Shown here: piece after piece, positions 322 through 62,053 of the stretch
Position numbering within the stretch: the first letter of the stretch is position 1
Layout: each line of letters opens with the position of its first letter
Origin: Bugula neritina
Taxonomy: Eukaryota; Animalia; Bryozoa
Direction: 5' to 3'
Assembly: GCA_964035545.1 (NCBI GenBank)
Contig: OZ037767.1
Location: 16,486,581-16,550,580, forward strand
DNA length: 64,000 nucleotides
Program-made: the position numbers and the translations under genes
The notes under the pieces: generated by a model
The model's database searches: none
The model's input: only the letters and a program-made list of their open reading frames with translations
What the model was told of the DNA's origin: nothing

Positions 322-8934
<8,613 letters not shown>

Positions 8935-10012
8935 CAGCTCGTTTAAGGAGTTTTCTTCTCTTTACTAACTGGTTGATGTGTCTGCAGTTATGACTCGCTG
9001 TTGTGGCGTGTACACAGGAGGTTACAGGATGTTAGGCAGCAGACGCTGCTGAGTTTTTTCTTGTCAGCTGAACAGCCACTGCGTAGCTTGGAATATAATA
9101 TTACTCTAATAGAAGGCAGATAACTCCCCTTAGATGTCATTACATTACACTTGTTGTGTTGTTAGATCATTATTAGTATTTAGAATATCTAATATTTCAC
9201 TCAACTCTACAGAATCTCATGACACATGTTCTATTTGAATAGTGTATATTCTCCTTAACCTGTGAATCAGCTATTTATTTAGTATATGTTTTCCTTTACC
9301 TGTGAATCAGCTATTTATTTAAGCTCACTAGGCAAATACTCAAGGTTCTTGTGTGTGTTTTTTTACATCAAGTATTTACATTTTGAATTACTTTTATATT
9401 TCGTGCTCTAAGTTGGTTTTAAATGCCGATATATCAACATTGACTTTATTGTTTTAAAATATTTGTATACATTGTAGGATATAGGATCTATAGGGTGATA
9501 TAGAGTGTCGTAATTTTAGGTTATTTGATGTCTACAATGTGTTTTGCAATAAAGTTATAAGCAATTGTAAAATATCTGTATGCCACTCATATGTACTGTC
9601 TCACACTGTTGCCAGATGAAGGTAAATCATATAGTGGGTGAAGGTTTATTTTATTGTTAAATAATTTCTAATTGAACACCAAACTTGAGCAAATAATAAA
9701 CTATGTCTATAATAAAAATTCTATGAATTTGGTGTTTCTTCAAAATTTAAAAGCTAAGAATTTTGAAATTAGGAAGAACAACATAAAAATTGAGTCAAAA
9801 GGTGTTCAAATATTACTTTGTAGAATAAATTAATTTAAAAACTTGTTTGTGAGAAATGTCACACATCAATGTTCCTTTATGTTAAAAGTGCTAATAAAAC
9901 TTGATTATCAAATTGCATATCTTACTGAGTCTTAAACTATAAGCTTCTTTAACTCGAAGCACAGCCAAAAGAAGTGTTAAATTATAGTATTCTACAACTC
10001 AGGCTCCATTTT

Positions 10013-12024
10013 TCACACTTCCGGTGGTTTATAGTCCTTGAACTTTTCAATCAAAGCCTGAACATCATTCTGCAGGTTAATTATTTGAATATTAGAGCTG
10101 TACCTGCGATAGGGTTTGCCGTTTGGGGCTACAATAAACTTTTCAAAGTTAGATGCAACGTCATTTCTGCAGACGGGAGACCAGGTGATATCTACAGCTG
10201 AGTCGACGAAGGTGTGGAGATCGTCGCTGGGCAAAGGAAGACTTTCTCGGAGGAAACGGAAGAGAGGATGAGCATTCTTACCATTGACCTCTACCTATAG
10301 TTTTATTAGAGAAATATTAAAAGATTGAACATTTGAAAAACAGCAACTCATTTAAATAATATTGCATGTGCAGAGCTTAACCAAGAAAAGTGAGTGAACG
10401 CTTCATAAACTGTCATTGGTCAAAAATAACTTCAAAGCTCTCCCATAAATTTAAAGTATTGCTAATTGTATTTCAGACCTCTTTGGAAACATAATCTCTT
10501 ATAACATTGTTAAAACTGCATGTGTCTATATTAATTCAGTGCATAATTTAATGGCAATGTGCAGTGGTCTAAGCAATTAAAGTCTTATATAATAATACCT
10601 ACTAATTTGCAAAAGATAGTGTGCACTTGAACCTATAGTTTAGCCAATTTAGCAATATAAAATTTAAGCTACTCTAAATAAAGGACATAAAATGATTAAT
10701 CACTTAGTTATTAGAATTCATGCATGTGTAATAAGCTTAAATCCCTTCTATAACTGCATACAATATTTCTATATAAAGAAAGAGAGACTATTAGTTCAAA
10801 GAGAGCCAAAACTCATTGTAACTGAGTCTAACCAAACCTATTCAAAGGCTAGCTATTGTTAACTTTTGTTTATGAATAGTAAAGTAGTTATTGATACTAA
10901 ATTCAAGTTATTTATATATAGAAACTATCGCAGCCACAAAGATCAGATACAAAACTCTACTGAAAGAGATGTTGTTTGCTGCCTGATTTAGAACTATTTT
11001 GAGAATAAATTATTTATTAGTAGTTATTCATTAACTACTAACAAATAAAAGCGCAAAGCTATTAATTGCCAAAATGTCTTTAGCATGCCAACAATGTTTT
11101 TGACTTACATTGTTGAATACTTCAAAGGTTGGGTAAAAGTCGTTTCCAGGTTGAATGTGTCGTAAAACTAGCAACAAGTCTTCAGCACTGCAATGATCCT
11201 AAAAGAAATTGAAATACTTTAAATGCATTTTATGAAAAAAATTAATATAAAAATTCTACATTTTAGCAACAATATACGAGGAAATAAAACAAGTATAACC
11301 AAGATTTATGATAGTAGTGCCCAAAAATACATGCAAGATTTTATTGTTAATACTGCTTTGAGTTTTTATTATTAAATTTTGTAAGTCAGCTTTGTCCTAT
11401 GCACTATTTAGACTTGCTAGTGTCATAATAACATTGATGCAGTGATTGAAACATGCAGTACACCCAGACTTTAAAATAGAATTAAAACTAGATCTTGAAA
11501 AATGAATAAAACACGATTTATGAATAAAGTAAATTTTAAAAATTTTGTAGAAATTGAAAGTTACAGCTAATAGTTTTTTTATTTGCATGCATTAGACGTT
11601 TTCCTAATTTAATAAAAAAATAGCTGAATATAGGCTAATAGTCGTTATAATAATTAATGAGCTCTAAAAAAGTTGTAGTTGTGATTCAGTTTGAAATCAG
11701 AAGGATAAACGACATTTTGTTTATTTGAAACATCATTACAATGCTGAACAAAACTAATGTTGTAAATTAACTTACAGAATGATGAAACTGATTGCATGCA
11801 AATCCGAGAACAGCTAGTTGACCGTGGTATTTTTCTTGAAGGTCATTCATTTGTTGGTATACTTTTGAGGATTTTTCCCCAAATGCAGCTATATTTACTA
11901 TTAACAATATTTTTCCCGCATATTTCTCTAATCTAAAACGTCGTCCTTTCACATCTTCCACCAAAATATCTTGAAGTTTTGTTATGGAGACAGGACTTCT
12001 CACCACTACTGCATTTGCCGCCAT
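10013..12024 (-). CDS. Glutathione peroxidase 1/2-like protein lacking catalytic residues (3 exons, 206 aa)
   Basis: Exons 12024-11776, 11198-11109, 10294-10013, all phase 0 GT-AG. GPX signatures GKILLIVNIAA, LAVLGFACNQF, VEVNGKNAHPLFRFLRESLPLPSDD, ITWSPVCRNDVASNFEKFIVAPNGKPYRRYS. No frameshift or internal stop. Confidence 0.9.
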
Positions 12025-18200: not shown

Positions 18201-21200
18201 AGGAAATGTTTGCAGACGTAATTACTCAGGCTAAGGGTTTACATCAGGTGAAGGAGGGACAGCAGCATGGCGAGTCCACTTCACTCAGCTCTGGTGAGGC
18301 TAACATCCTGTGTCATGTGATACTAGGATGTGTCATGTGACACTAAGATGTGTCATGTGATACTAGGATGTGTCATGTGATGCTAAGATGTGTCATGTGA
18401 CACTAAGATGTGTCATGTGATACTAGGATGTGTCATGTGATGCTAAGATGTGTCATGTGACACTAAGATGTGTCATGTGATACTAGGATGTGTCATGTGA
18501 TGCTAAGATGTGTCATGTGATACTAAGATGTGTCATGTGATACTAGGATGTGTCACGTGACACTAAGATGTGTCATGCGATACTAAGATGTGTCATGTGA
18601 TACTAGGATGTGTCATGTGATGCTAAGATGTGTCATGTGATGCTAAGATGTGTCATGTGATACTAAGATGTGTCATGTGATACTAAGTTGTGTCATGTGA
18701 TACTAGGATGTGTCTTTACTCATTCTTTGCATGTTGTGTTGCAGCAGGCAAAAATCAGGCTATGCAGCTGTTGGAAAGGGACCCTCATGTGCCCACCCAA
18801 ACTTTCACTGTTCAAGGGCAGAAGATTGAACTGGTCATTCCTTTGAACATGAAGTCGACCAATGAACATGTTGTGGAGCCACCCAATGAGAGATTGAAGC
18901 TGGACTGGGTGTAAGCAGTCTTACCTAATCTTAGATCCTAAACGTCTTTTGTCTCCCGCAGCTTTTACTTGTTATTCTTGAATATACATAGTCTTTGTGA
19001 GAATATATTATTCAATGTAACAAGACAAGACTATTAAGTTTAAAATTATCAAACTTCAACTTGGATGTATCAGTTGACCTCCATTGACCTTGAAAGTGGG
19101 CGTGGCTCTCACACCAGCTGTGGACTCTTCAACCTGTAGGTATGGCTATAATGGCATGAGGAACAACCTCCATATTGTGAAGAGTGGTGAGTTGGTCTAC
19201 TCGACTGGTCACATGGTAATCCTCCGAACTTACTCCCAGCATTCCTGTAAACAGAGACAGTACCGTGAGCATACTGCACCCATCACATGGTCAGTGTAAG
19301 GGAGGTGATCCTATCCCCCCCCCGCATGGCTAACAGTAGCTTGTAGATACTCAGTCTAATTGGCTAGCAGTCAACATAGCAGTTTGTGGCACCAGAAATT
19401 GTCTACTTTTCTGTTGCAAAGTCAACATCTTGTTTATATTTGAATTACAACTTTTGTTATTTCTACATGAGGATGATCATTGAATTATATTATATTTCCT
19501 GTGAAATCGTCAAGGGGCCTCTCTAAATAAAACCGATCTATTATGTGGAATAGTGCTATAAGCAGCTTCGAGCAAATGGTTAAAGGAAGATTTTAGTTTG
19601 AAGTTATGTCCCCAACTCCTAACTAAAGTCATCCCTCACCCCCATCTCGGAGCTGCTTATAGAACAACCCTCGTATTGTGTACTCAGCTGATGAATTCTT
19701 ACAACATATAGAGTATAATGTGTAGTATTATTCTCTACTATTACTTGTCATCAGTTCATAAAGCCTCGGTCTTCTCAGTGTGAGTAGCCTGAGCTCTTAG
19801 TACATGTTTCAGCCTTTCAGTGCATTCAGACGGGATGAGGGTAGCCAGCGCCCAGTCCAACTACATGAAGACCGCGGCTCATATTAGACTGTGGAACAGC
19901 GATAATCTGCACACACTCTCTGTGTTTAAGGATACTAAGGCTACATCTCTCAACTACACTCACCTCACATTCTATCTTCCTGAGGTGAGGAATTAAATCT
20001 CTTATAGATTCAACATCTAGAAAGACTGACCCTTTCAACTCATTCTACTGGACCTACTCATAATTTGTCCCTCTTAGTTACATGAAATGTTTTATTAAAA
20101 ATAAATATAATACCTGTGCTTTTGTTGAGCAACTTCAATGTTTTTTATTGATTCATAATAATTTAAATACATATGCTGGTTTTGTATAATAGATTGACTG
20201 TTTCATATATATTGTATTAAATAGTATTACAGTCAGATATACTAAAACAGTATTAAATTTAGATGATAGAAATCATTAATGTAAGCCAGTTGATTAAGTA
20301 AGGGCCAGTTGAGTTGATGAGTCGACAGGGTCTATTTCAGGCTCAGGCGCATTGACCTTTCTTCTAACCTTTCTCAAACCTTCAAAAGACACAGTTATAG
20401 ATCACTTTGTGATATACAGCTAAAACAAGAGTTTCAAAACTGTGACTGGAGCAATCTAGTATTAAAACATAATGATCCAATAGTAGCATACAGAAATTTC
20501 TTGAACGAAACATCTCATATATTTAACAAATTGGCACCTTTTCAAGAAAAGACTTTCCATTTCAATAGAAAAAAGGCGAATAACTGGATCACGGATCGTT
20601 TAAAAAAAGAAATTCACAAAAAAGACAGGCTTTTTTCACAACACAAAGCTTTTCCATACAGCCCAAAACTTAAGCAAGCCTACATTAAGCAAAGAAACAA
20701 AGTATCAACCTTAATTAAACAAGCCAAGTATAACTACTATGATAAGCTGATTTCTAACCAAGCAGACTCCAGAAAGCTTTGGAATACAATCAACAATGCT
20801 TGTGGAAGAAAATCAACCTCTCCAAGCTTCCCAGTAAAGCTAAAAGTTGACTCAGAAATCATTACCCACCATACAGAAATAGCAAACTATATAAACAATT
20901 ATTTCACTAACATTGGAAAGAACTTAGCCGATAAAATACCAAGTGTTCCTGAGATCCCAGTCAATTCCAAAGATTGTCCTTCATTTTATTTTCAGCTGGT
21001 AGACAAAAACAGAGTTTTAACTGAACTAAAAAATTTGAATGAAAATAAATCAGAAGGCTTAGACTTGATCCCAGCGAGGCTAGTTAAACAAAGTGCAACT
21101 TACCTTTGTCAGCCTCTCACACATATTATAAACTTGATAATTAAATCAGGTGTCATTCCTAATGAACTGAAAGTAGCCAAGATTTTGCCATTTTACAAAA

Positions 21201-24200
21201 ATAAAGGTGACAAACTTTTATGTAGTAATTATCGGCCTATCTCAATACTTCCAGTTTACTCTAAAATACTTGAAAAAATAATTTGCAAGCAATTACATGA
21301 ACATTTAAACCTACACAAAATTTTGTCGGTTTCTCAATTTGGCTTCCAACAGAAGAAGGGTGCGCAAGACGCACTGATTAAGTTTTCAGACCAATCCTTC
21401 AAAGCACTTAATGACTCATCAGTAATATTGGGTATTTTCATTGATTTCTCAAAAGCATTCGATACAATCAACCACAATTTTTTGCTACAGAAACTACAAG
21501 ATTACAATTTTGATTCTCACTCCATAAGTTTAATCCAAAACTACTTGACCAATCGAACACAGCATGTTATAATAGAGAACAGTATATCCAATTCCTTGCA
21601 TATCACCTGTGGAGTTCCCCAGGGCTCTATCTTGGGCCCTGTGCTCTTTCTGCTGTACATAAATGATTTAGCTACCCATTGTCCTTTATTTGATACTATT
21701 CTGTTTGCCGACGACACAAATCTTTTTTGGAAGAGCAAAGATTTAAATGCTGATATTGGAAATATAAACTCCTCACTAAATAAAGTTAATAACTGGTGCA
21801 TTGCAAACAAACTAACTCTAAACTTAACGAAAACAAACTATATCATTGTTAAAAACTACCAAAAGAATTTTGTACTTAACAGTACCATCCATATTGACAA
21901 TATACCTCTCTCACCTAGCTCAGAAATAAAATTTTTAGGTGTAGTTATTGACATTAACTTAAACTGGTGTGCTCATATAAATTCTTTAAGGACTCAGCTC
22001 AACAAAGTAACTGGTATGATATACTTAGCTTCAAAGTTTTTACCATACAAAGCTTTGATTTTATTATATAACAGTCTGATAAACAGCAAACTTACATATT
22101 GCTTAGAAGCCTGGGGAAATGCCCCTAAAACCCATCTGAACAAGTTGCTTTTAATTCAAAAACGCATTATTCGCATTATTTTCCACAAATCACCTACTGA
22201 ACACACGTCACCTCTATTTATCAAAGCAGAAATTCTTCCTATTGATCTCTTGTATATCTACCGCCTATGTCTTCTTGGTCATTCAGCTTATTATACTCCA
22301 TCTCACACCAAACAACCACCAACTTACCTCACCAGACATTCTGAACTTTCCTTACCCTTACCTCTCTCTACCTCCGCAGCAGGTCATCGTCAAGTGTCCT
22401 ACCAGATGTCTAGCAATTGGAATAAACTACCTCTGACTTTAAGACATCATCAAAGCTTTGCCACATTTAAAATATTGTTGAAAAAGCACCTACTAAAATC
22501 TTTAACTTAATCTGAATAAATAGTTCCCACTATTTTTTCAACTGCCACTTGGGCCCCGCTCCTTGAATAGCTATGCTACTGAGCACATGGGCCCCCATCT
22601 TGACTTCGATTGATATTGATATTATATATAAATTGAATTTAGCTCTTTTTGTGTTACTGTTGTATATTTGTATTTTTTTTGTCCTTTTGTTTTTTTTTGA
22701 TGGAAATAAAGAAAACAACAAACAACAACAACAACTATACTCCAGTTTCACACTTACGTAGTATTGTACTTATATATAACTGTAAGTACTGTCAGTGTGT
22801 TTTATATGATACATTCTACTGACTGTTAGAAGCTGTAGCTGAGTTCTACGTTACCTGTGTGTTTCCTGTAGGCAGGTAAACCACGCGTCTCCACACACAC
22901 TAACCTCTTTCTAGTTGGAGAGGAACAAGATAGCTCCGTTAATGTTTCAGTGTGGGATATAGAATCTAAGTCTAAGTTAGCTTGTGAACCAGTTGACACA
23001 AAACAGCTCTGCTCACTGAGCTTCAACCCATCTGTACCCGACATGTTTGTCACTCTAGGTATATCTATGCTCTAAATACTTTATATACTTACTATAGTAT
23101 ATCTACACTATATACATACTATAGTATATCTACTCTATATACTTACTATAGTATATCTACTCTGTATACTTACTATAGTATATCTAATCTATATACTTAC
23201 TATAGTATATCTACTCTATATACTTACTATGCTCTAAATACTCTATATACTTACTATAGTATATCTACTCTATATACTTACTATAGTATATCTACTCTGT
23301 ATACTTACTATAGTATATCTAATCTATATACTTACTATAGTATATCTAATCTATATACTTACTATACTATATCTAATCTATATACTTACTATAGCATATC
23401 TACTCTATAATCTACATACTATACTACAGTATATTATATACTATTATAGTAACATATTTATTAATATTATATACTATAGTAATTTACTTATTACTATAAT
23501 ACGTCATATATACTATAGTAACTTACTTATTACTATATGTCATATATACTATATAATGCAGGTAAAGACCACTTTCAATGGTGGCGAATCGACCAGCAAT
23601 GCAGAACCATGACTCATTACCGAGAACCAAACTTTGGAGTGAGTCGTCTCACCTTGTCACACTTGAGCTGTCATGGAACACAGGCTATGCTGCTGCCAGC
23701 TTTATGTGTTCTAGTTTTCACTATTTTCACTAGTTTAAAGTTTTTGTAAAACTGTTTCACCAGCATTTAAACACTTGGTTGTTGTGCTGCCTTCTGTCAG
23801 CAAAAAGCTGCATGGTGGTGTGTGACGGCAGCGACCAGCATTAGAGGTAAAATAATATGTTGTCACATTCATCTTTCTTTAGATACAGCTGAAGGCGAGG
23901 TTCTACCACTGTCTGGTTCACACACCAGATGGCAGTCTAGTCACTGGGGACTCCAACGGCACCGTCTATGTCTGGCCTCCTTCCATCAACACCATTTCTA
24001 ATCTTATTAAACATGCCCATGAGGTGAGTTTTTCCTTTCAACTGAGATATCTATGTGGACGCCTCCTATTTGTAAATGATACCGTTTTGTGGAACGCATG
24101 CTAGAAGTTCACATTTCTGGCTATCCCTGCACATTTTGATGCCTTGATGCTGCTCTTTTTATGATTTTCTGTGTTAACACTAGCTGATATTTGATCTCTT

Positions 24201-47300: not shown

Positions 47301-50300
47301 ATGGTACAGTAAGTAACTAGATAGTATAGTAAGTAACTAGATAGTATAGTAAGTAACTAGATCGTATAGTAAGTAACTAGATGGTACAGTAAGTAACTAG
47401 ATGGTATAGTAAGTAACTAGATGGTACAGTAAGTAACTAGATGGTACAGTAAGTAACTAGATGGTATAGTAAGTAACTAGATGGTATAGTAAGTAACTAA
47501 GTGGTACAGTAAGTAACTAGATGGTATAGTAAGTAACTAGATGGTATAGTAAGTAACTAGATGGTACAGTAAGTAACTAGATGGTACAGTAAGTAACTAG
47601 ATAGTATAGTAAGTAACTAGATAGTATAGTAAGTAACTAGATGGTACAGTAAGTAACTAGATGGTACAGTAAGTAACTAGATGGTACAGTAAGTAACTAG
47701 ATAGTACAGTAAGTAACTAGATAGTATAGTAAGTAACTAGATCGTATAGTAAGTAACTAGATGGTACAGTAAGTAACTAGATGGTACAGTAAGTAACTAG
47801 ATGGTATAGTAAGTAACTAGGTGGTATAGTAAGTAACTAGATGGTACAGTAAGTAACTAGATGGTATAGTAAGTAACTAGATGGTACAGTAAGTAACTAG
47901 ATGGTACAGTAAGTAACTAGATGGTATAGTAAGTAACTAGATGGTATAGTAAGTAACTAGATGGTACAGTAAGTAACTAGATGGTACAGTAAGTAACTAG
48001 ATGGTATAGTAAGTAACTAGATGGTACAGTAAGTAACTAGATAGTATAGTAAGTAACTAGATAGTATAGTAAGTAACTAGATCGTACAGTAAGTAACTAA
48101 TGTTTCAGACGCTGACGAAGTGAAATCTCAGGTGCTGCTGAATGCGGAAGATGCATATGCCAGGCAAACAGCCAAGGTAATGAATCTCTCGTTACTTCCT
48201 GTTAGTTAGCCGGTAACCAATACGAAGAAGTAACTCATAGTATACTAAGTAGATGGTAGGTAATAATTGTTGTATTACAGTGTTGGTGTTATACAGGCCT
48301 TAAGAGAAAAGGTTATCTAAAGCCAGCGGATAAAAAGCTAATGCTTTATGTACATACTGCCTGACACTCTCTCTCTACGACTCAACCTAGTAACACGTTC
48401 TATGCCCAATAAAGCTTATTCACTTAATACTACATGGTGGCAGCTATGGGATACGAACCCACGCCTCCGAAGGAACGGGTGTAGTAACTCTATACCAAGT
48501 TGGTAGCAGGTAATAATAACAAGATATAATAACTCGTACACTAAGTTGAAGCACTAGAGGAAGAACTCTTGACCTTTCAGACTAAACAATTTGATGGTCG
48601 AGTGTCGAGCAAGTCGTCTGCTGTCGTCCCCGTTGCCGTGGATACGGAGAAACAAGCTGACTATCCACAGCCCAGTATATTTGTTGGTAAACTCAAGACC
48701 TACCAGATCAAGGTGAGCCCACCTGCCTACACTGTTAACTCATTCTACTTTCAGTGTGTGTATGTAAGACATCAGATTGTGCAGTTGTCTCACCTTGTAC
48801 TTCTCTACTGTCCCCTCAGGGTATGAATTGGCTGGCGGATCTCTATAGCCAGGGAATCAACGGCATTCTCGCCGACGAGATGGGACTCGGTAAGACTGTC
48901 CAGTCCATAGCCTTCCTCGCCCACTTAGCGGAGGTCCACGGCATTTGGGGACCATTCCTTGTGGTGGCTCCAGCCTCTACCCTTCACAACTGGCAGCAGG
49001 AGTCTGCTAGATTTCTGCCTAAGATGAGAGTTGTCCCCTACTGGGGTACCACTCAGGAGAGAAAGGTGGGCGTGGCTGCTGCTATGAAGTATTGCTTAGT
49101 GTATTACATCATTATATTACTGTATTACACCATTATAAAACTGTATTATATTACTGTATTATTACTCTGGCAGATACTGAGGAAGTTCTGGGACCAGAAA
49201 CACCTGCACACGGAGCAAGCCTCCTTCCACATTGTCATAACCAGCTACCAGCTTATCATACAGGACTGTAAATACTTCTCCAAGATTCACTGGCACTACA
49301 TGGTGTTGGATGAGGCTCAGGCGTTGAAGAGTAGCTCCAGGTACACCTCTCTCCCCCTTTCTCCTCTCCGCCTCCCCCTTCTTTCTCTCCCTCTCTCTCT
49401 CCTCCCCTCTCCCCCCTCTCTCCTCTCCTCATCTCCTCTCCCCCCCCTCTCTCCTCCTCTCCCTCTCTCTCTCTCCTTCTCTCTCCCCCTCTCCCTTCCC
49501 CCTCCCCCTCTCTGTACAACTTCTATCCACCTTCTTATTCTATGTGTAGTTATACACTCTCCCTACTCTATTATATTCTACATCTACTCTATTGTATTCT
49601 ACTACATCTAATCTATTATATTCTACATCTACACTAATATGTTTTACTCAGTTTTCAATACAAGTTAGCCAACTATTTCCCTTCACACTGTTTTAGTACG
49701 AGATGGAAAACTCTACTCAGCTTCAACTGTAGGAATCGTCTTCTCCTCACAGGGACTCCAATACAGAACAGCATGGCTGAGGTTAGCATCTACTTACAGT
49801 GTCTATACAGTATCTATATACAGTATCTAGTATCTATACAGTATCTAGTATCTATACAGTATCTAGTATCTATATACAGTATCTAGTATCTATACAGTAT
49901 CTAGTATCTATACAGTATCAAGTATCTATATACAGTATCTAGTATCTATACAGTATCTAGTATCTATACAGTATCAAGTATCTATACAGTATCTAGTATC
50001 TATATACAGTATCTAGTATCTACACAGTATCTAGTATCTATACTCTGTATCTAGTATATATATACAGTATCTAGTATATATATACAGTATCTAGTATCTA
50101 TATACAGTATCTAGTATCTACACAGTATCTAGTATCTATACTCTGTATCTAGTATCTATATACTGTATCTAGTATCTATATACAGTATCTAGTATCTATA
50201 TACAGTATCTAGTATCTATATACAGTATCTAGAATACACAGTATCTAGTATCTATACTCTGTATCTAGTATCTATATACTGTATCTAGTATCTATATACA

Positions 50301-58768: not shown

Positions 58769-61700
58769 ATGGATAAGAAAGTCCTGGAAAGTGTGCAGAA
58801 GTTGCAATTAGTGAAATGTAGTGAAGGGGCTCTGGAAGAAAGCATGAAGATTGCTTCTGCCATTGAAGACGTAGGCATGGTTTACTTAGAATCCAATGCC
58901 CACCATTTGGCTCTACCTTACTTTAAGCAAGCATTGAAAATGGCCGACAGTTTGCTAGGCTTGCAGGCTCCAACAAGTGAAGTGATGGCTGGCTTACATA
59001 GCAAGATTGGTAAAGTTCTTACAACACAAATGAAGTATCACTTGGCTTTAGAACATTTAAACAAGGCTGCCCATATATACGAAGGGCTAAGAGATCCCAC
59101 CTTGATTTCCATGTGCTCCTTGGCACATACCTACAACTCTCTAGGGGTCCTGAAAAGACAGACGTGTGAGTTTGATTGTTCCCAGAAGTTACATTTTCAA
59201 GCTCTAAAGTTACTGCAGACTCAGAATGATGTTGGAAGGGAGTTGGATAAAGAGCTGGCCTACACTCACACCTGTATTGGGGATCTCTTCTTTGATCAGT
59301 GTCAATTTACTAAAGCTCTACAGGCTTACCAGAGGTCTGCTACTGCATACGTCGTTATGGACGAGCTCTGCGGGGGTCAGGAGTTGGATTGCGTGATAGA
59401 CTTGGCCCTGGTTTATATCAAACGAAGTCAAACGTTTGTTAAGTTGGCCAATTATGAAGACGGAGAGTCCGAAATGCAGCTTGGCATGAATCATGTAAAT
59501 GAATTCTTTGGCGGTGAAATTGTTCATTGGATTTGGCCTCTGTGCTTTATAGTACTTGGCGAAGTTGGCTTCATCCAAAAACATTTGGTTTATTCTCGAC
59601 AGGCTTTTGAACAAGCATTGGACTTACTAGCAGACTACTACGGGCCTGACAACGTGGGATTCCCGCTAATAGGCCGAACGTACATAGGTCTTGCCACAAC
59701 TCTAGCCTACACAAACCGGTTTAGGGACTCAAAAATATACTTTGATTATGCTTTGGAGTCCTATGAGGAGGTCTATGAAAGCCCTTGCCATCCCGAGCTG
59801 GCGCGGGTACATAACTCCATAGGCGAGTGTTACTACAGCCAAGGTGACTTTACTAGGGCTCTGGTTCACCACCATAAAGCACTGACTATGTTTAAAGCTA
59901 GTTTAGGTAAAGAAGTCGACCATAGTCTTGTCTCTGCCACATATAATAGTATCGGTAAACTGTATACAGCCATCGGCGACCATGTCGCTGCCCATGACTT
60001 TCTCTCTCAATCTTATTCAATCAACTCCCGAATATATAAAGACTTGAACAATGAGGCTCTCATAAGTAACTTCCTTAATATTGGAGATGTTTTTCTCAAC
60101 GAAGAAAAGTTCCAGTGTGCGTTGAGCTTTACCAGTAAGGCCGAGGAATCGGCTAATGCGATGACTAGCATGCAGACTGTGCATCCTCTGTTTGTGATTA
60201 TTCACAACCAAATGGGCCACATACTGAAGGGAGAAGGAAAGTACGAAGAAGCTATAAAAAAATACCAAAACACCTGTAAAATTTGTACCAGCATTAATAG
60301 GGTCTTTCCTACCATAGACAAAGCCTTGGCTTGTTTCAACTGTGCCAATACTCGTTATCTTAAGGATGAGTACACAGAAGCAAACCAAAATTACCAGGAA
60401 GGACTGAATATTACAAAAAAAATTTTAGAAGTAGAAAAATACATTCCACCAGAAACTGCATTGTTTCATATAGAGCTTGGTCAGGCCTCCTTTCGGGTAT
60501 TTGATTTTGAGTCTGCTCTCAAAGAATACAGAGAAGCTGATCGCCTTCTAAACTGCGTGGGCCTGAACTTCCATGTGAATAAAGCACTGGTGGCATCTTA
60601 CTCAGGGGATGCTCAGTTTGAGTTGGGAAACATCAGCGATGCACTGGACCTGTACCTCGATGCCTTAGCCATTTATCAGCAGGTCTACCAGGAGTTCCTA
60701 GATAGGAAAGATATAGCAGATGTGTTTCACAATATCGGAGTTTCCTACCTTAAATTAGGCCTCTACAATTCAGCTATAAAATATTTGGGTGAAGCTATAA
60801 AAATGAAGGAAAGATTACCCGAACCGAGTGCTCCAGCCACAGCAAATAGTTACGATGCCATTGGTACAGTGTATCATGAGCTAGATCGACACCATCTGGC
60901 TATGAAGTATTACAAGAAGTCTTTGGAGCTCAGACAGAACCACTACTGTGTAAACCTCGCGCATGCTGATGTAGCCACCAGCTACAAGCTCTTAGCAAAA
61001 TCTTACAGCGCTGTGGGCGATACTGATACAGCGTATCAGTTTCAAGTGAAAGCTTTAGAAATTATCACCCTTCTGCCGGTTCTCAAGAATGGGACCACCG
61101 GGCTACGAACAGGAGAATTCCTCGAGGCGTTTGCTGCTATTCTCACAGAGCATGGTGAATTTTATCAAGCTAAGAATCAGTTACAAAAAGCGCTAAAAGC
61201 CGTGTCGGAATGTCAAAATAAAGTTAAAAGCATGCTGCTGACCCACAGCATGGAGTCTAGCAAGTTGGAGAAAATAATTATTCGAGTTTCGCTGCCATCT
61301 GTTGCTAAGATACATTTTCAAAAAGGACGAGTCAATTACTTGCATGGTATCAGTACTTTCTATGACGGAATTAATATTGGTTCACGTCGTCCCCTCCTGG
61401 AAACAGCTTTGGAGAGCTTTAACGAAGCACTGAGTTTGGTGTCACAAGTTGATGAGCCAGATAACAATTCTCCAGATCTTGCTGCTATTCATTTGCACCT
61501 GGGCCGTGTTTACACCCAGCCAACGATGGCGCCTTTAGATAGTAGGAATCATGCTACAGCCTTGTGTCACCACATAAAAGCAGTTCAAATCTTAGAGTGG
61601 TACTACGAGAGAAATCCAATTCACCGAGACATCGCGATTGCGTACAATGACCTTGGCTACGTCTACATACTTCGAGAAGAGTATGATAAAGCGCTTGATC

Positions 61701-62053
61701 ATTGCAAAGTCGCACTGAATAAATTAGAAGAATTGTACGGCAAAAGAGAGAGTAAATTGGAAGTCGCCCAGGTGTTTGAAAATATTGGCACTATCAATTT
61801 CAACCAAGAAAATTATCAGGATGCATTAGAATATTACACCGTTTCGTACCAAATCAAGACAAAGCTGTATGGGAAGTACGTCAGGTTCAGCGTAGAACTG
61901 GCTAAAATTAATAGACATCTAGCTAAAGTCCACAGAGCTCTGGGGTGCATCAAGGAAAGCACGTATCACGAGCAAATGGCTGACAGAATTTCATTTCCTT
62001 CAGCTGGTCCCATAGAGAAACGGGGCTGCCCATTACTTCGACTACTAAAATGA
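58769..62053 (+). CDS. Tetratricopeptide-repeat protein (NPHP3/TTC28/KLC-type long TPRs), 1094 aa, intronless CDS
   Basis: Single ORF with repeated motifs of the type HPELARVHNSIGECYYSQGDFTRALVHHHKAL, IADVFHNIGVSY, IAIAYNDLGYVY. Probable 5' UTR intron 58560-58686; AATAAA at ~62150. Confidence 0.88.
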   Translation: MDKKVLESVQKLQLVKCSEGALEESMKIASAIEDVGMVYLESNAHHLALPYFKQALKMADSLLGLQAPTSEVMAGLHSKIGKVLTTQMKYHLALEHLNKAAHIYEGLRDPTLISMCSLAHTYNSLGVLKRQTCEFDCSQKLHFQALKLLQTQNDVGRELDKELAYTHTCIGDLFFDQCQFTKALQAYQRSATAYVVMDELCGGQELDCVIDLALVYIKRSQTFVKLANYEDGESEMQLGMNHVNEFFGGEIVHWIWPLCFIVLGEVGFIQKHLVYSRQAFEQALDLLADYYGPDNVGFPLIGRTYIGLATTLAYTNRFRDSKIYFDYALESYEEVYESPCHPELARVHNSIGECYYSQGDFTRALVHHHKALTMFKASLGKEVDHSLVSATYNSIGKLYTAIGDHVAAHDFLSQSYSINSRIYKDLNNEALISNFLNIGDVFLNEEKFQCALSFTSKAEESANAMTSMQTVHPLFVIIHNQMGHILKGEGKYEEAIKKYQNTCKICTSINRVFPTIDKALACFNCANTRYLKDEYTEANQNYQEGLNITKKILEVEKYIPPETALFHIELGQASFRVFDFESALKEYREADRLLNCVGLNFHVNKALVASYSGDAQFELGNISDALDLYLDALAIYQQVYQEFLDRKDIADVFHNIGVSYLKLGLYNSAIKYLGEAIKMKERLPEPSAPATANSYDAIGTVYHELDRHHLAMKYYKKSLELRQNHYCVNLAHADVATSYKLLAKSYSAVGDTDTAYQFQVKALEIITLLPVLKNGTTGLRTGEFLEAFAAILTEHGEFYQAKNQLQKALKAVSECQNKVKSMLLTHSMESSKLEKIIIRVSLPSVAKIHFQKGRVNYLHGISTFYDGINIGSRRPLLETALESFNEALSLVSQVDEPDNNSPDLAAIHLHLGRVYTQPTMAPLDSRNHATALCHHIKAVQILEWYYERNPIHRDIAIAYNDLGYVYILREEYDKALDHCKVALNKLEELYGKRESKLEVAQVFENIGTINFNQENYQDALEYYTVSYQIKTKLYGKYVRFSVELAKINRHLAKVHRALGCIKESTYHEQMADRISFPSAGPIEKRGCPLLRLLK

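What the first reader, a model, noticed from the sequence alone, without database searches (positions are those of the whole stretch)
10013..12024. Intact GPX1/2-type gene with three catalytic residues replaced (candidate pseudo-peroxidase)
Established: GPX catalysis uses Sec/Cys, Gln, Trp and Asn (motifs NVASxU/CGxT, CNQFGxQE, WNFEKFL). Seen: here the motifs are NIAAFGEKS (Gly49, codon GGG at 11880-11878, neither TGA nor TGY), CNQFHHSD (Gln to Ser83) and SNFEKFI (Trp to Ser161, TCT at 10153-10151). Only the Asn remains. The ORF, splice sites, the GPX1-like intron position after the FHHS motif, the oligomerisation-loop region (LPLPSDD...ITWSPVCRND) and RRYS are all well preserved. I saw no obvious SECIS in the 3' UTR. 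Inference: selection retains the fold without peroxidase chemistry. It may be a scaffold, a heterotetramer regulator of active GPX, a glutathione/ligand sensor or a structural protein.
Basis: partly seen in the sequence, partly recalled or inferred. Interest (0 to 1): 0.8.

Follow-up and report, generated by a model that had tools for sequence, protein, structure and literature searches.

The report
Conserved dead GPX1-type peroxidase homologue
This is a real, strongly conserved gene for a glutathione-peroxidase-1-like protein that lost its selenocysteine and two other catalytic residues long ago, so an enzyme fold has been kept for some non-peroxidase job.

Summary
A three-exon, 206-codon gene on the minus strand encodes a GPX1-type protein. 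It has Gly49 at the selenocysteine site, Ser83 at the Gln site and Ser161 at the Trp site; only the Asn is kept.

It is not a pseudogene. Against a sibling lineage about 17% diverged in the introns, the coding sequence shows 25 synonymous and 2 non-synonymous changes (dN/dS 0.019) and no indels.

Full three-exon orthologues lie in four more distant lineages, and a fifth is known from exon 1 only. Synonymous sites between these lineages are saturated. Gly at the Sec site is invariant, with GGG, GGA and GGT codons. The Gln and Trp sites vary but hold only small residues.

In this genome it is the only tetrameric-type GPX. The other two GPX genes are a Sec GPX4-type and a Cys GPX7/8-type ending in RDEL. 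A tRNA-Sec gene is present, so selenocysteine was not lost genome-wide.

The most likely reading is an ancient pseudo-peroxidase that works as a non-redox binding protein. That mechanism is inferred, not shown.

The parts
11776..12024 (-). Exon 1 (codons 1-83). It holds the former active-site loop (NIAAFGEKS) and the CNQFHHS motif.
   Evidence: Pfam GSHPx 1e-14; PDB alignments
11878..11880 (-). Gly49 codon (GGG) at the Sec/Cys position.
   Evidence: Gly in all six lineages, with GGG/GGA/GGT codons in the lineages whose DNA was read.
11776..11778 (-). Ser83 codon (TCT) at the catalytic Gln position; last codon of exon 1.
   Evidence: S/S/A/S/G across lineages.
11199..11775 (-). Intron 1 (GT..AG), at the same position in all orthologues.
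   Evidence: JC distance to the sibling lineage 0.18, with 66 gap columns.
11109..11198 (-). Exon 2 (codons 84-113), 90 nt in every lineage. It contains Cys86, which is specific to the window's lineage and its sibling.
10295..11108 (-). Intron 2 (GT..AG).
10013..10294 (-). Exon 3 (codons 114-206) plus the TGA stop. About 65% identical to human GPX1 residues 126-207.
10160..10240 (-). GPX1-type oligomerisation-loop region (LPLPSDD ... CRND).
   Evidence: Ungapped alignment to 2f8a, 1gp1 and 2he3; conserved in the orthologues.
10151..10153 (-). Ser161 codon (TCT) at the catalytic Trp position.
   Evidence: S/S/D/N/T across lineages.
10148..10150 (-). Asn162 codon (AAC), the only tetrad residue kept.
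   Evidence: Asn in all five lineages seen over exon 3.
10103..10108 (-). Arg176-Arg177 of RRYS, matching the two C-terminal glutathione-binding arginines of GPX1.
   Evidence: Invariant in the orthologues. The role in GSH binding comes from established knowledge of GPX1.
9645..9655 (-). Two overlapping AATAAA hexamers, the likely polyadenylation signal about 360 nt after the stop.
   Evidence: Read from the sequence; inference only.

Best explanation
This is a functional gene under strong purifying selection. It encodes a GPX1-type (tetrameric-class) thioredoxin-fold protein that cannot carry out selenol- or thiol-based peroxide reduction. The Sec site is Gly, and the Gln and Trp that activate it are replaced by small residues.

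The change is old and shared. Six lineages carry Gly at the Sec position. GGA is one step from TGA, so the most likely origin is a single T-to-G change in a Sec-GPX1 ancestor. That change freed the gene from UGA recoding.

What is kept: the oligomerisation loop, the NFEKF and RRYS segment, the core strands and the N-terminus. What is lost or free to vary: the redox residues and three of the five glutathione-contacting basic residues.

My reading of how it works, which is inferred, is as follows. It forms a non-redox homotetramer whose former active-site depression, now lined only with small residues, serves as a binding pocket. The ligand would be glutathione, a related small molecule, or a partner protein. 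On this reading it is a pseudo-enzyme retained for binding, not catalysis.

The gene model, the substitutions, the selection, the antiquity and the lack of a catalytic tetrameric partner in this genome are shown. The tetramer, the pocket and the ligand are inferred.
For: - Substitutions at the aligned catalytic positions.
- Selection against the sibling lineage (L006): Sd 25, Nd 2, dS 0.218, dN 0.0041, dN/dS 0.019, P about 4e-15. Intron JC distance is 0.17-0.18 with 66-71 gap columns, and the exons have no indels.
- Orthologues with the same three-exon, phase-0 structure in L011, L012, L015 and L016, plus P0151 (exon 1 only).
- Between those lineages pS is 0.71-0.97 (saturated) against pN 0.21-0.31. 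76 of 198 columns are invariant.
- The Gly codon shows synonymous turnover: GGG, GGA, GGT.
- The Gln and Trp columns hold only G/A/S/T/D/N. Only 8 of the 67 columns with three or more states are like that.
- The own genome has three GPX loci only. With canonical tetrameric queries this gene is the best and only tetrameric-type match.
- The other two GPX genes keep Sec (the codon after NVASQ is TGA) and Cys.
- tRNA-Sec is present at 79.9 bits with anticodon TCA.
- Precedents for Sec-family proteins kept after losing classic chemistry: PMC10958145 and PMC4561486.
Against:
- No structure of the full protein was made, so the pocket, the tetramer and the position of Cys86 are untested.
- Glutathione binding is doubtful in this species. 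Only the two RRYS arginines are kept. The R57 equivalent is Lys, the K91 equivalent is Ser and the R103 equivalent is Gln, although R103 is Arg in the other four lineages.
- The small-residue argument is weak (roughly P 0.01-0.02, and the lineages are not independent).
- One orthologue (L012) carries a 1-nt deletion in exon 3, which could mean decay in that lineage.
Confidence: 0.6

Rival explanations
1. It is a pure protein-protein scaffold or structural protein. The GPX1 tetramer is kept as an architectural or adaptor unit, and the former active site has no ligand.
For: The most conserved segments are the oligomerisation loop and the C-terminal NFEKF-to-RRYS stretch, not the active-site loop. 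Three of the five glutathione-contacting basic residues are not kept in this species. GPX4 is known to moonlight as a structural protein of the sperm mitochondrial capsule (established knowledge).
Against: Gly at the Sec site is invariant despite codon turnover, and the Gln and Trp sites accept only small residues. That suggests the site itself is still constrained.
Confidence: 0.22
2. It still performs redox or other catalysis through different residues. Candidates are Cys86 near the former Gln site in the window's lineage, Cys77 of CNQF, or a Ser- or His-based glutathione-dependent reaction.
For: Cys86 lies three residues after the Gln position and is kept in both sibling lineages. Ser52 and the RRYS arginines are invariant. 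Mouse Cys-GPX6 is proposed to have unidentified new properties.
Against: Cys86 is Gly or Val in the four other lineages, and Cys155 is Arg in L016. Cys77 is the standard CNQF cysteine found in catalytic GPXs too. So no alternative nucleophile is conserved across the clade.
Confidence: 0.1
3. It is a non-catalytic subunit that regulates an active tetrameric GPX by forming mixed tetramers.
For: The oligomerisation loop is retained. Many pseudo-enzymes regulate active paralogues (general knowledge).
Against: No other tetrameric-type GPX exon is found in the 216-Mb assembly with the Pfam profile, with exon 3, or with canonical queries. The remaining GPXs are of the GPX4 and GPX7/8 types, which lack the loop.
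Confidence: 0.05
4. It is a recently inactivated gene drifting as a young pseudogene.
For: Three of the four tetrad residues are gone. No expression data are available.
Against: dN/dS is 0.019 with dS 0.22, the reading frame and splice sites are intact, and there are no indels. The same state is conserved in lineages with saturated synonymous divergence.
Confidence: 0.02

Closest known systems
Mammalian GPX1 (and GPX2), the tetrameric selenocysteine glutathione peroxidases (PDB 2f8a, 1gp1, 2he3)
   Same: Same family and subtype. Exon 3 matches human GPX1 at E 4e-28, about 65% identity, and is collinear through the oligomerisation loop. The NFEKF, RRYS and CNQF motifs, the length (206 aa) and the absence of a signal peptide all agree.
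   Different: Sec is Gly, Gln is Ser and Trp is Ser, and no SECIS-like element was seen. The equivalents of R57, K91 and R103 are Lys, Ser and Gln. The gene has two introns.
Cys-containing GPX6 of rodents and other mammals (Rees et al. 2024, PMC10958145)
   Same: A tetrameric-class GPX that lost Sec and its classic GPX activity, yet is kept and functional, with a new or residual role proposed.
   Different: GPX6 keeps a redox-capable Cys and the rest of the tetrad, and regains activity when Sec is restored. Here there is no thiol or selenol at all, and two more tetrad residues are gone.
SPS1 (SPS1-Gly, -Thr, -Arg, -Leu), the non-Sec and non-Cys copies of selenophosphate synthetase (Mariotti et al. 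2015, PMC4561486)
   Same: A Sec position converted to a non-redox residue, including Gly in ascidians. The protein is conserved and has a function distinct from the ancestral enzyme.
   Different: It is an unrelated fold and pathway. SPS1 coexists with a catalytic SPS2 paralogue, whereas here no catalytic tetrameric GPX paralogue remains.
Other apparently dead GPX homologues seen here: P0116 (GPX1-like) and P0009 (GPX4-like)
   Same: P0116 has LPLPADD and VTWSP motifs, with the Sec site as Ala, Gln as Glu, Trp as Ser and Asn as Asp. P0009 has Ser at the Sec site and Ala at the Gln site.
   Different: P0116 has a different intron layout and a long Ser-rich N-terminus, and is only 29% identical in exon 1. 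Whether it shares the loss event is unknown. P0009 belongs to the monomeric GPX4 type.

Membership tests
Glutathione peroxidase family (Pfam PF00255 GSHPx) | Significant match to the family profile | tested here: met
   Exon 1 scores 54.4 bits against a cut-off of 27, E 1e-14. There are 38 PDB GPX chains at E <= 1e-3.
Glutathione peroxidase family (Pfam PF00255 GSHPx) | Catalytic tetrad: Sec/Cys, Gln, Trp, Asn | tested here: not met
   The residues are Gly49, Ser83, Ser161 and Asn162, so only Asn is kept. It is a homologue by descent but should not be filed as a peroxidase.
Glutathione peroxidase family (Pfam PF00255 GSHPx) | Hydroperoxide reduction with glutathione or thioredoxin | not testable with these tools
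   This needs a recombinant enzyme assay.
Tetrameric GPX1/2-type subfamily | Oligomerisation loop and C-terminal half collinear with GPX1 | tested here: met
   Ungapped 82-residue alignment to 2f8a, 1gp1 and 2he3, E 4e-28 to 2e-22. The GPX4-type chains match only partly.
Tetrameric GPX1/2-type subfamily | In-frame TGA (Sec) with a SECIS element in the 3' UTR | tested here: not met
   The codon is GGG. A crude local pattern scan of 713 nt after the stop found no SECIS-like candidate, but it was run without a positive control.
Tetrameric GPX1/2-type subfamily | Glutathione-contacting basic residues (bovine numbering R57, K91', R103, R184, R185; from established knowledge) | tested here: inconclusive
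   R184 and R185 are kept in all lineages. R103 is Gln here but Arg in the other four. R57 is Lys here and variable elsewhere. K91 is Ser here and variable elsewhere.
Tetrameric GPX1/2-type subfamily | Homotetramer | not testable with these tools
   This needs SEC-MALS or a structure.
Pseudo-enzyme (catalytically dead homologue kept by selection) | Loss of essential catalytic residues | tested here: met
Pseudo-enzyme (catalytically dead homologue kept by selection) | Purifying selection on the coding sequence, with conservation across species | tested here: met
   dN/dS 0.019, P about 4e-15. Five lineages seen over all three exons, and a sixth over exon 1.
Pseudo-enzyme (catalytically dead homologue kept by selection) | Expression as RNA and protein | not testable with these tools

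The most novel reading that the evidence does not exclude
The GPX1 fold has been repurposed in a whole animal clade, apparently bryozoans, into a non-redox protein that has replaced the catalytic tetrameric GPX altogether. Its enlarged, small-residue-lined former active site would bind a ligand or carry out a new glutathione-related reaction. If so, GPX1 has an old, catalysis-independent function that can be studied here free of peroxidase activity.
Probability: 0.25. Interest if true: 0.75.

Novelty: new variant of a known kind. Interest (0 to 1): 0.6.

Why it matters
GPX surveys usually define members by the Sec/Cys-Gln-Trp-Asn tetrad. One metazoan survey scanned its candidate sequences for that tetrad and classed them as Sec- or Cys-type (PMC9925728), so a clade like this has no place in such schemes.

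This is a tetrameric GPX1-type protein with no redox residue, yet it is under selection as tight as a housekeeping enzyme. It is also the only tetrameric GPX in its genome. That gives a natural separation-of-function case for any non-catalytic role of GPX1.

It is also a second example, after SPS1, of a Sec codon becoming a non-Cys sense codon with the gene retained.

Practically, it warns against counting this gene as antioxidant capacity when such genomes are annotated.

Tried and rejected
- The look-up of sequencing runs was asked for window:9650-10294 and, beside it, window:11776-12110. I did not try again, read laying was therefore impossible, and I did not send the first stretch to any public or Rfam search afterwards. 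It was used only in local scripts and alignments.
- **Word searches.** The search with exon 1 found only P0001, a prokaryote-style call that runs into intron 1. The search with P0002 added only P0151. The search with P0116 found only itself. No full-length spliced protein id was obtained.
- **Joined protein.** All searches, alignments and dN/dS counts were done exon by exon and summed. No structure prediction or fold search was run.
- **Metagenome scan.** The scan with the dead-clade exon-1 alignment (A4) was swamped by ordinary bacterial Cys-GPX genes. The apparent Gly hits were alignment shifts next to a Cys.
- **ESM Atlas.** Exon 1 returned only generic GPX clusters.
- **Rfam.** The scan of the GPX4-type locus found no SECIS within the 6.4 kb held.
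- **Literature.** I found no description of a Gly-type GPX1 clade.
- **Rejected readings.** Pseudogene, assembly error at the Gly codon (it is shared by six lineages), and genome-wide loss of selenocysteine (tRNA-Sec and a TGA-GPX4 gene are present).

Full report
**1. What is there**

The minus strand of 10013-12024 holds a clean three-exon gene:
- exon 1 at 12024-11776 (83 codons);
- exon 2 at 11198-11109 (30 codons);
- exon 3 at 10294-10016 (93 codons), with the stop at 10015-10013.

Both introns are GT..AG and every exon is phase 0. In-frame stops lie just upstream of the ATG, and AATAAA hexamers lie at 9655-9645.

Exon 1 matches Pfam GSHPx at E 1e-14. Exon 3 aligns to human GPX1 (2f8a) at E 4e-28, without a gap through the GPX1/2-specific oligomerisation loop. 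Exon 1 aligns to bovine GPX1 at E 7e-9.

In those alignments the Sec site is Gly49 (GGG, 11880-11878) and the Trp is Ser161 (TCT, 10153-10151). The exon-1 alignment with Gln-bearing relatives places Ser83 (TCT, 11778-11776) at the Gln position. The Asn is kept.

**2. Not a pseudogene**

A word search with exon 1 returned one protein, P0001. It is a prokaryote-style gene call that reads from exon 1 into the intron, on contigs from JGI and Logan assemblies (L006-L010). Those contigs are about 83% identical to the window overall, so they come from a diverged sibling lineage.

The exons are 95-96% identical with no indel. The introns show JC distances of 0.17-0.18 and 66-71 gap columns.

Counting exon by exon and summing gives 25 synonymous and 2 non-synonymous differences. 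That is dS 0.218, dN 0.0041 and dN/dS 0.019, with P about 4e-15 against neutrality. The two replacements are Ile to Val and the C-terminal Val to Leu.

**3. An old clade**

The exhaustive HMMER search with exon 1 gave 370 hits. Only five stand apart from ordinary GPXs: P0001-P0005, with E from 1e-46 to 1e-15. All five are calls that run into the same intron after the F-x-H-S motif.

Their contigs (L011, L012, L015, L016) contain all three exons, with identical phase-0 boundaries and a 90-nt exon 2. A sixth lineage, P0151, was added by a word search and is known from exon 1 only.

Residues at the catalytic positions across the five lineages seen over all three exons:

| Position | Window (= L006) | L011 | L012 | L015 | L016 |
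|---|---|---|---|---|---|
| Sec site | Gly | Gly | Gly | Gly | Gly |
| Gln site | S | S | A | S | G |
| Trp site | S | S | D | N | T |
| Asn site | N | N | N | N | N |

The Gly codons are GGG, GGA, GGA, GGA, GGT and GGG (window, L006, L011, L012, L015, L016). P0151 also has Gly.

Between these lineages pS is 0.71-0.97, which is saturated, while pN is 0.21-0.31. 76 of 198 ungapped columns are invariant.

GGA is one step from TGA. The closest catalytic relative found, P0007/L020, has a TGA at that codon and keeps the Gln. The most economical history is therefore one T-to-G change in a Sec-GPX1 ancestor.

The Gln and Trp columns vary but contain only G/A/S/T/D/N. Only 8 of the 67 columns with three or more states are like that. 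This is weak evidence that the site must stay open rather than being unconstrained.

**4. Genomic setting**

The assembly (216 Mb, 321 contigs) has three GPX loci:
- a GPX4-type gene on C1 in which the codon after NVASQ is TGA, followed by GFT;
- a GPX7/8-type gene with a catalytic Cys and Gln, ending in RDEL;
- this gene.

Searches with exon 3, with a canonical tetrameric GPX (P0023) and with the Sec-type exon 1 (P0007) found no other tetrameric-type exon.

A tRNA-Sec gene is present at 79.9 bits with anticodon TCA. The animal therefore still uses selenocysteine, but its only GPX1-type protein has none.

An earlier scan note calls this a bryozoan genome. I did not verify that, and the organisms behind the orthologous contigs are unnamed.

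**5. What is kept and what is lost**

Kept in all five lineages seen over all three exons:
- the MA-x-x-G-V-x-RSP N-terminus;
- the core strand GK-x-x-L-I-V-N;
- CNQF;
- the PG-N-x-F segment of exon 2;
- LPLPSDD and the loop;
- the Asn (N-F-E-K-F);
- the stretch P-N-G-K-P-Y-R-R-Y-S, which includes the two arginines that contact glutathione in GPX1 (the role is from established knowledge of GPX1). In L012 the Pro codon of that stretch is the site of the 1-nt deletion.

Lost or free to vary:
- the redox residue;
- the Gly-Thr-Thr that follows Sec;
- the equivalents of bovine R57 and K91;
- R103, in this lineage only (Gln here, Arg in the other four).

No alternative cysteine is conserved. Cys155 is Arg in L016, Cys86 occurs only in the window's lineage and its sibling, and Cys77 is the CNQF cysteine common to catalytic GPXs.

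**6. Interpretation**

Shown:
- a selectively maintained, ancient GPX1-type protein without the residues needed for peroxide reduction;
- no catalytic tetrameric GPX partner in this genome.

Inferred:
- it still tetramerises, because the loop is conserved;
- it acts through binding at the remodelled site, to glutathione, a related ligand or a partner protein.

A pure scaffold role is the main rival. Residual chemistry through Cys86 is a minor rival that applies to this lineage only. The heterotetramer-regulator and pseudogene readings are disfavoured (sections 2 and 4).

**7. Relation to the known**

By descent it is a member of the GPX family and of the tetrameric GPX1/2 subtype. It fails the defining catalytic-tetrad test, so it should be described as a GPX1-derived pseudo-peroxidase and not as a peroxidase.

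The closest precedents are:
- Cys-GPX6, which lost classic activity yet is retained (PMC10958145);
- SPS1-Gly, -Thr, -Arg and -Leu, where a Sec site became a non-redox residue with a new function (PMC4561486).

In the library searched I found no description of a conserved Gly-type GPX1 clade. One metazoan survey scanned GPX candidates for the tetrad and classed them as Sec- or Cys-type (PMC9925728).

**8. Limits**

It was used only in local scripts and alignments.
- The joined protein was not searched, folded or used for a tree, so no structural test of the pocket, the tetramer or Cys86 was possible.
- The SECIS scan was a crude local pattern test without a positive control.
- L012 has a 1-nt deletion in exon 3 on its single metagenome contig. 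This is either an assembly error or decay in that lineage.

Noticed in passing
L104:971-1730 (also L105-L107); protein P0116: A GPX1-like gene on compact marine eukaryote contigs has all four tetrad positions replaced: Sec to Ala, Gln to Glu, Trp to Ser, Asn to Asp. It keeps the LPLPADD, VTWSP and GKPVRRY motifs, has a Ser-rich N-terminal extension, and has an intron inside VAS|DFEKF. It may be a second, or a wider, dead-GPX1 lineage.
   Followed up: partly
protein P0009 (203 aa): A GPX4-type protein with an N-terminal hydrophobic segment has NVASSSS at the Sec/Cys site and FAHAEPG at the Gln site, while keeping KWNFTKF. This looks like another catalytically dead GPX, in an unknown organism.
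   Followed up: no
L012:11095-11105: A 1-nt deletion breaks exon 3 of the orthologue on this single JGI metagenome contig (reads ...GTC GCT TGA ACG...). It is either an assembly error or decay of the gene in that lineage.
   Followed up: partly
L015:1369-1384: The contig ends in an Illumina adapter sequence (AGATCGGAAGAGCGTCGT), so the orthologue's exon 3 is cut by an untrimmed adapter and not by biology.
   Followed up: no
L020:254-500; protein P0007: The database protein shows Trp at the Sec site because the gene caller read TGA as Trp. The DNA has TGA (NVASL-TGA-DTTVRDY), so this is a genuine Sec GPX1-type exon and the closest catalytic relative of the dead clade found here.
   Followed up: yes
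L001:1720-1890 (own genome C1, intron of the Sec GPX4-type gene): About six tandem copies of a roughly 27-nt unit (ctactagttg.atagtgaatagttata) sit inside the intron after the CNQFGSQ exon.
   Followed up: no
window 20501-22510 (+): A 669-aa ORF with a reverse-transcriptase domain (RVT_1, E 1.5e-36); a retroelement copy.
   Followed up: no
window 58769-62053 (+): An uninterrupted 1094-aa ORF packed with TPR repeats (TPR_12 at E 2e-67, with a weaker hit to the nephrocystin-3 TPR domain that falls below its curated cut-off). This is unusually long for a single exon in this intron-rich genome.
   Followed up: no
window 48754-49611 (+) and 6440-7243 (+): Exon-sized ORFs with an SNF2-related helicase domain (E 9e-40) and with ankyrin repeats; these are neighbouring genes that I did not examine.
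   Followed up: no
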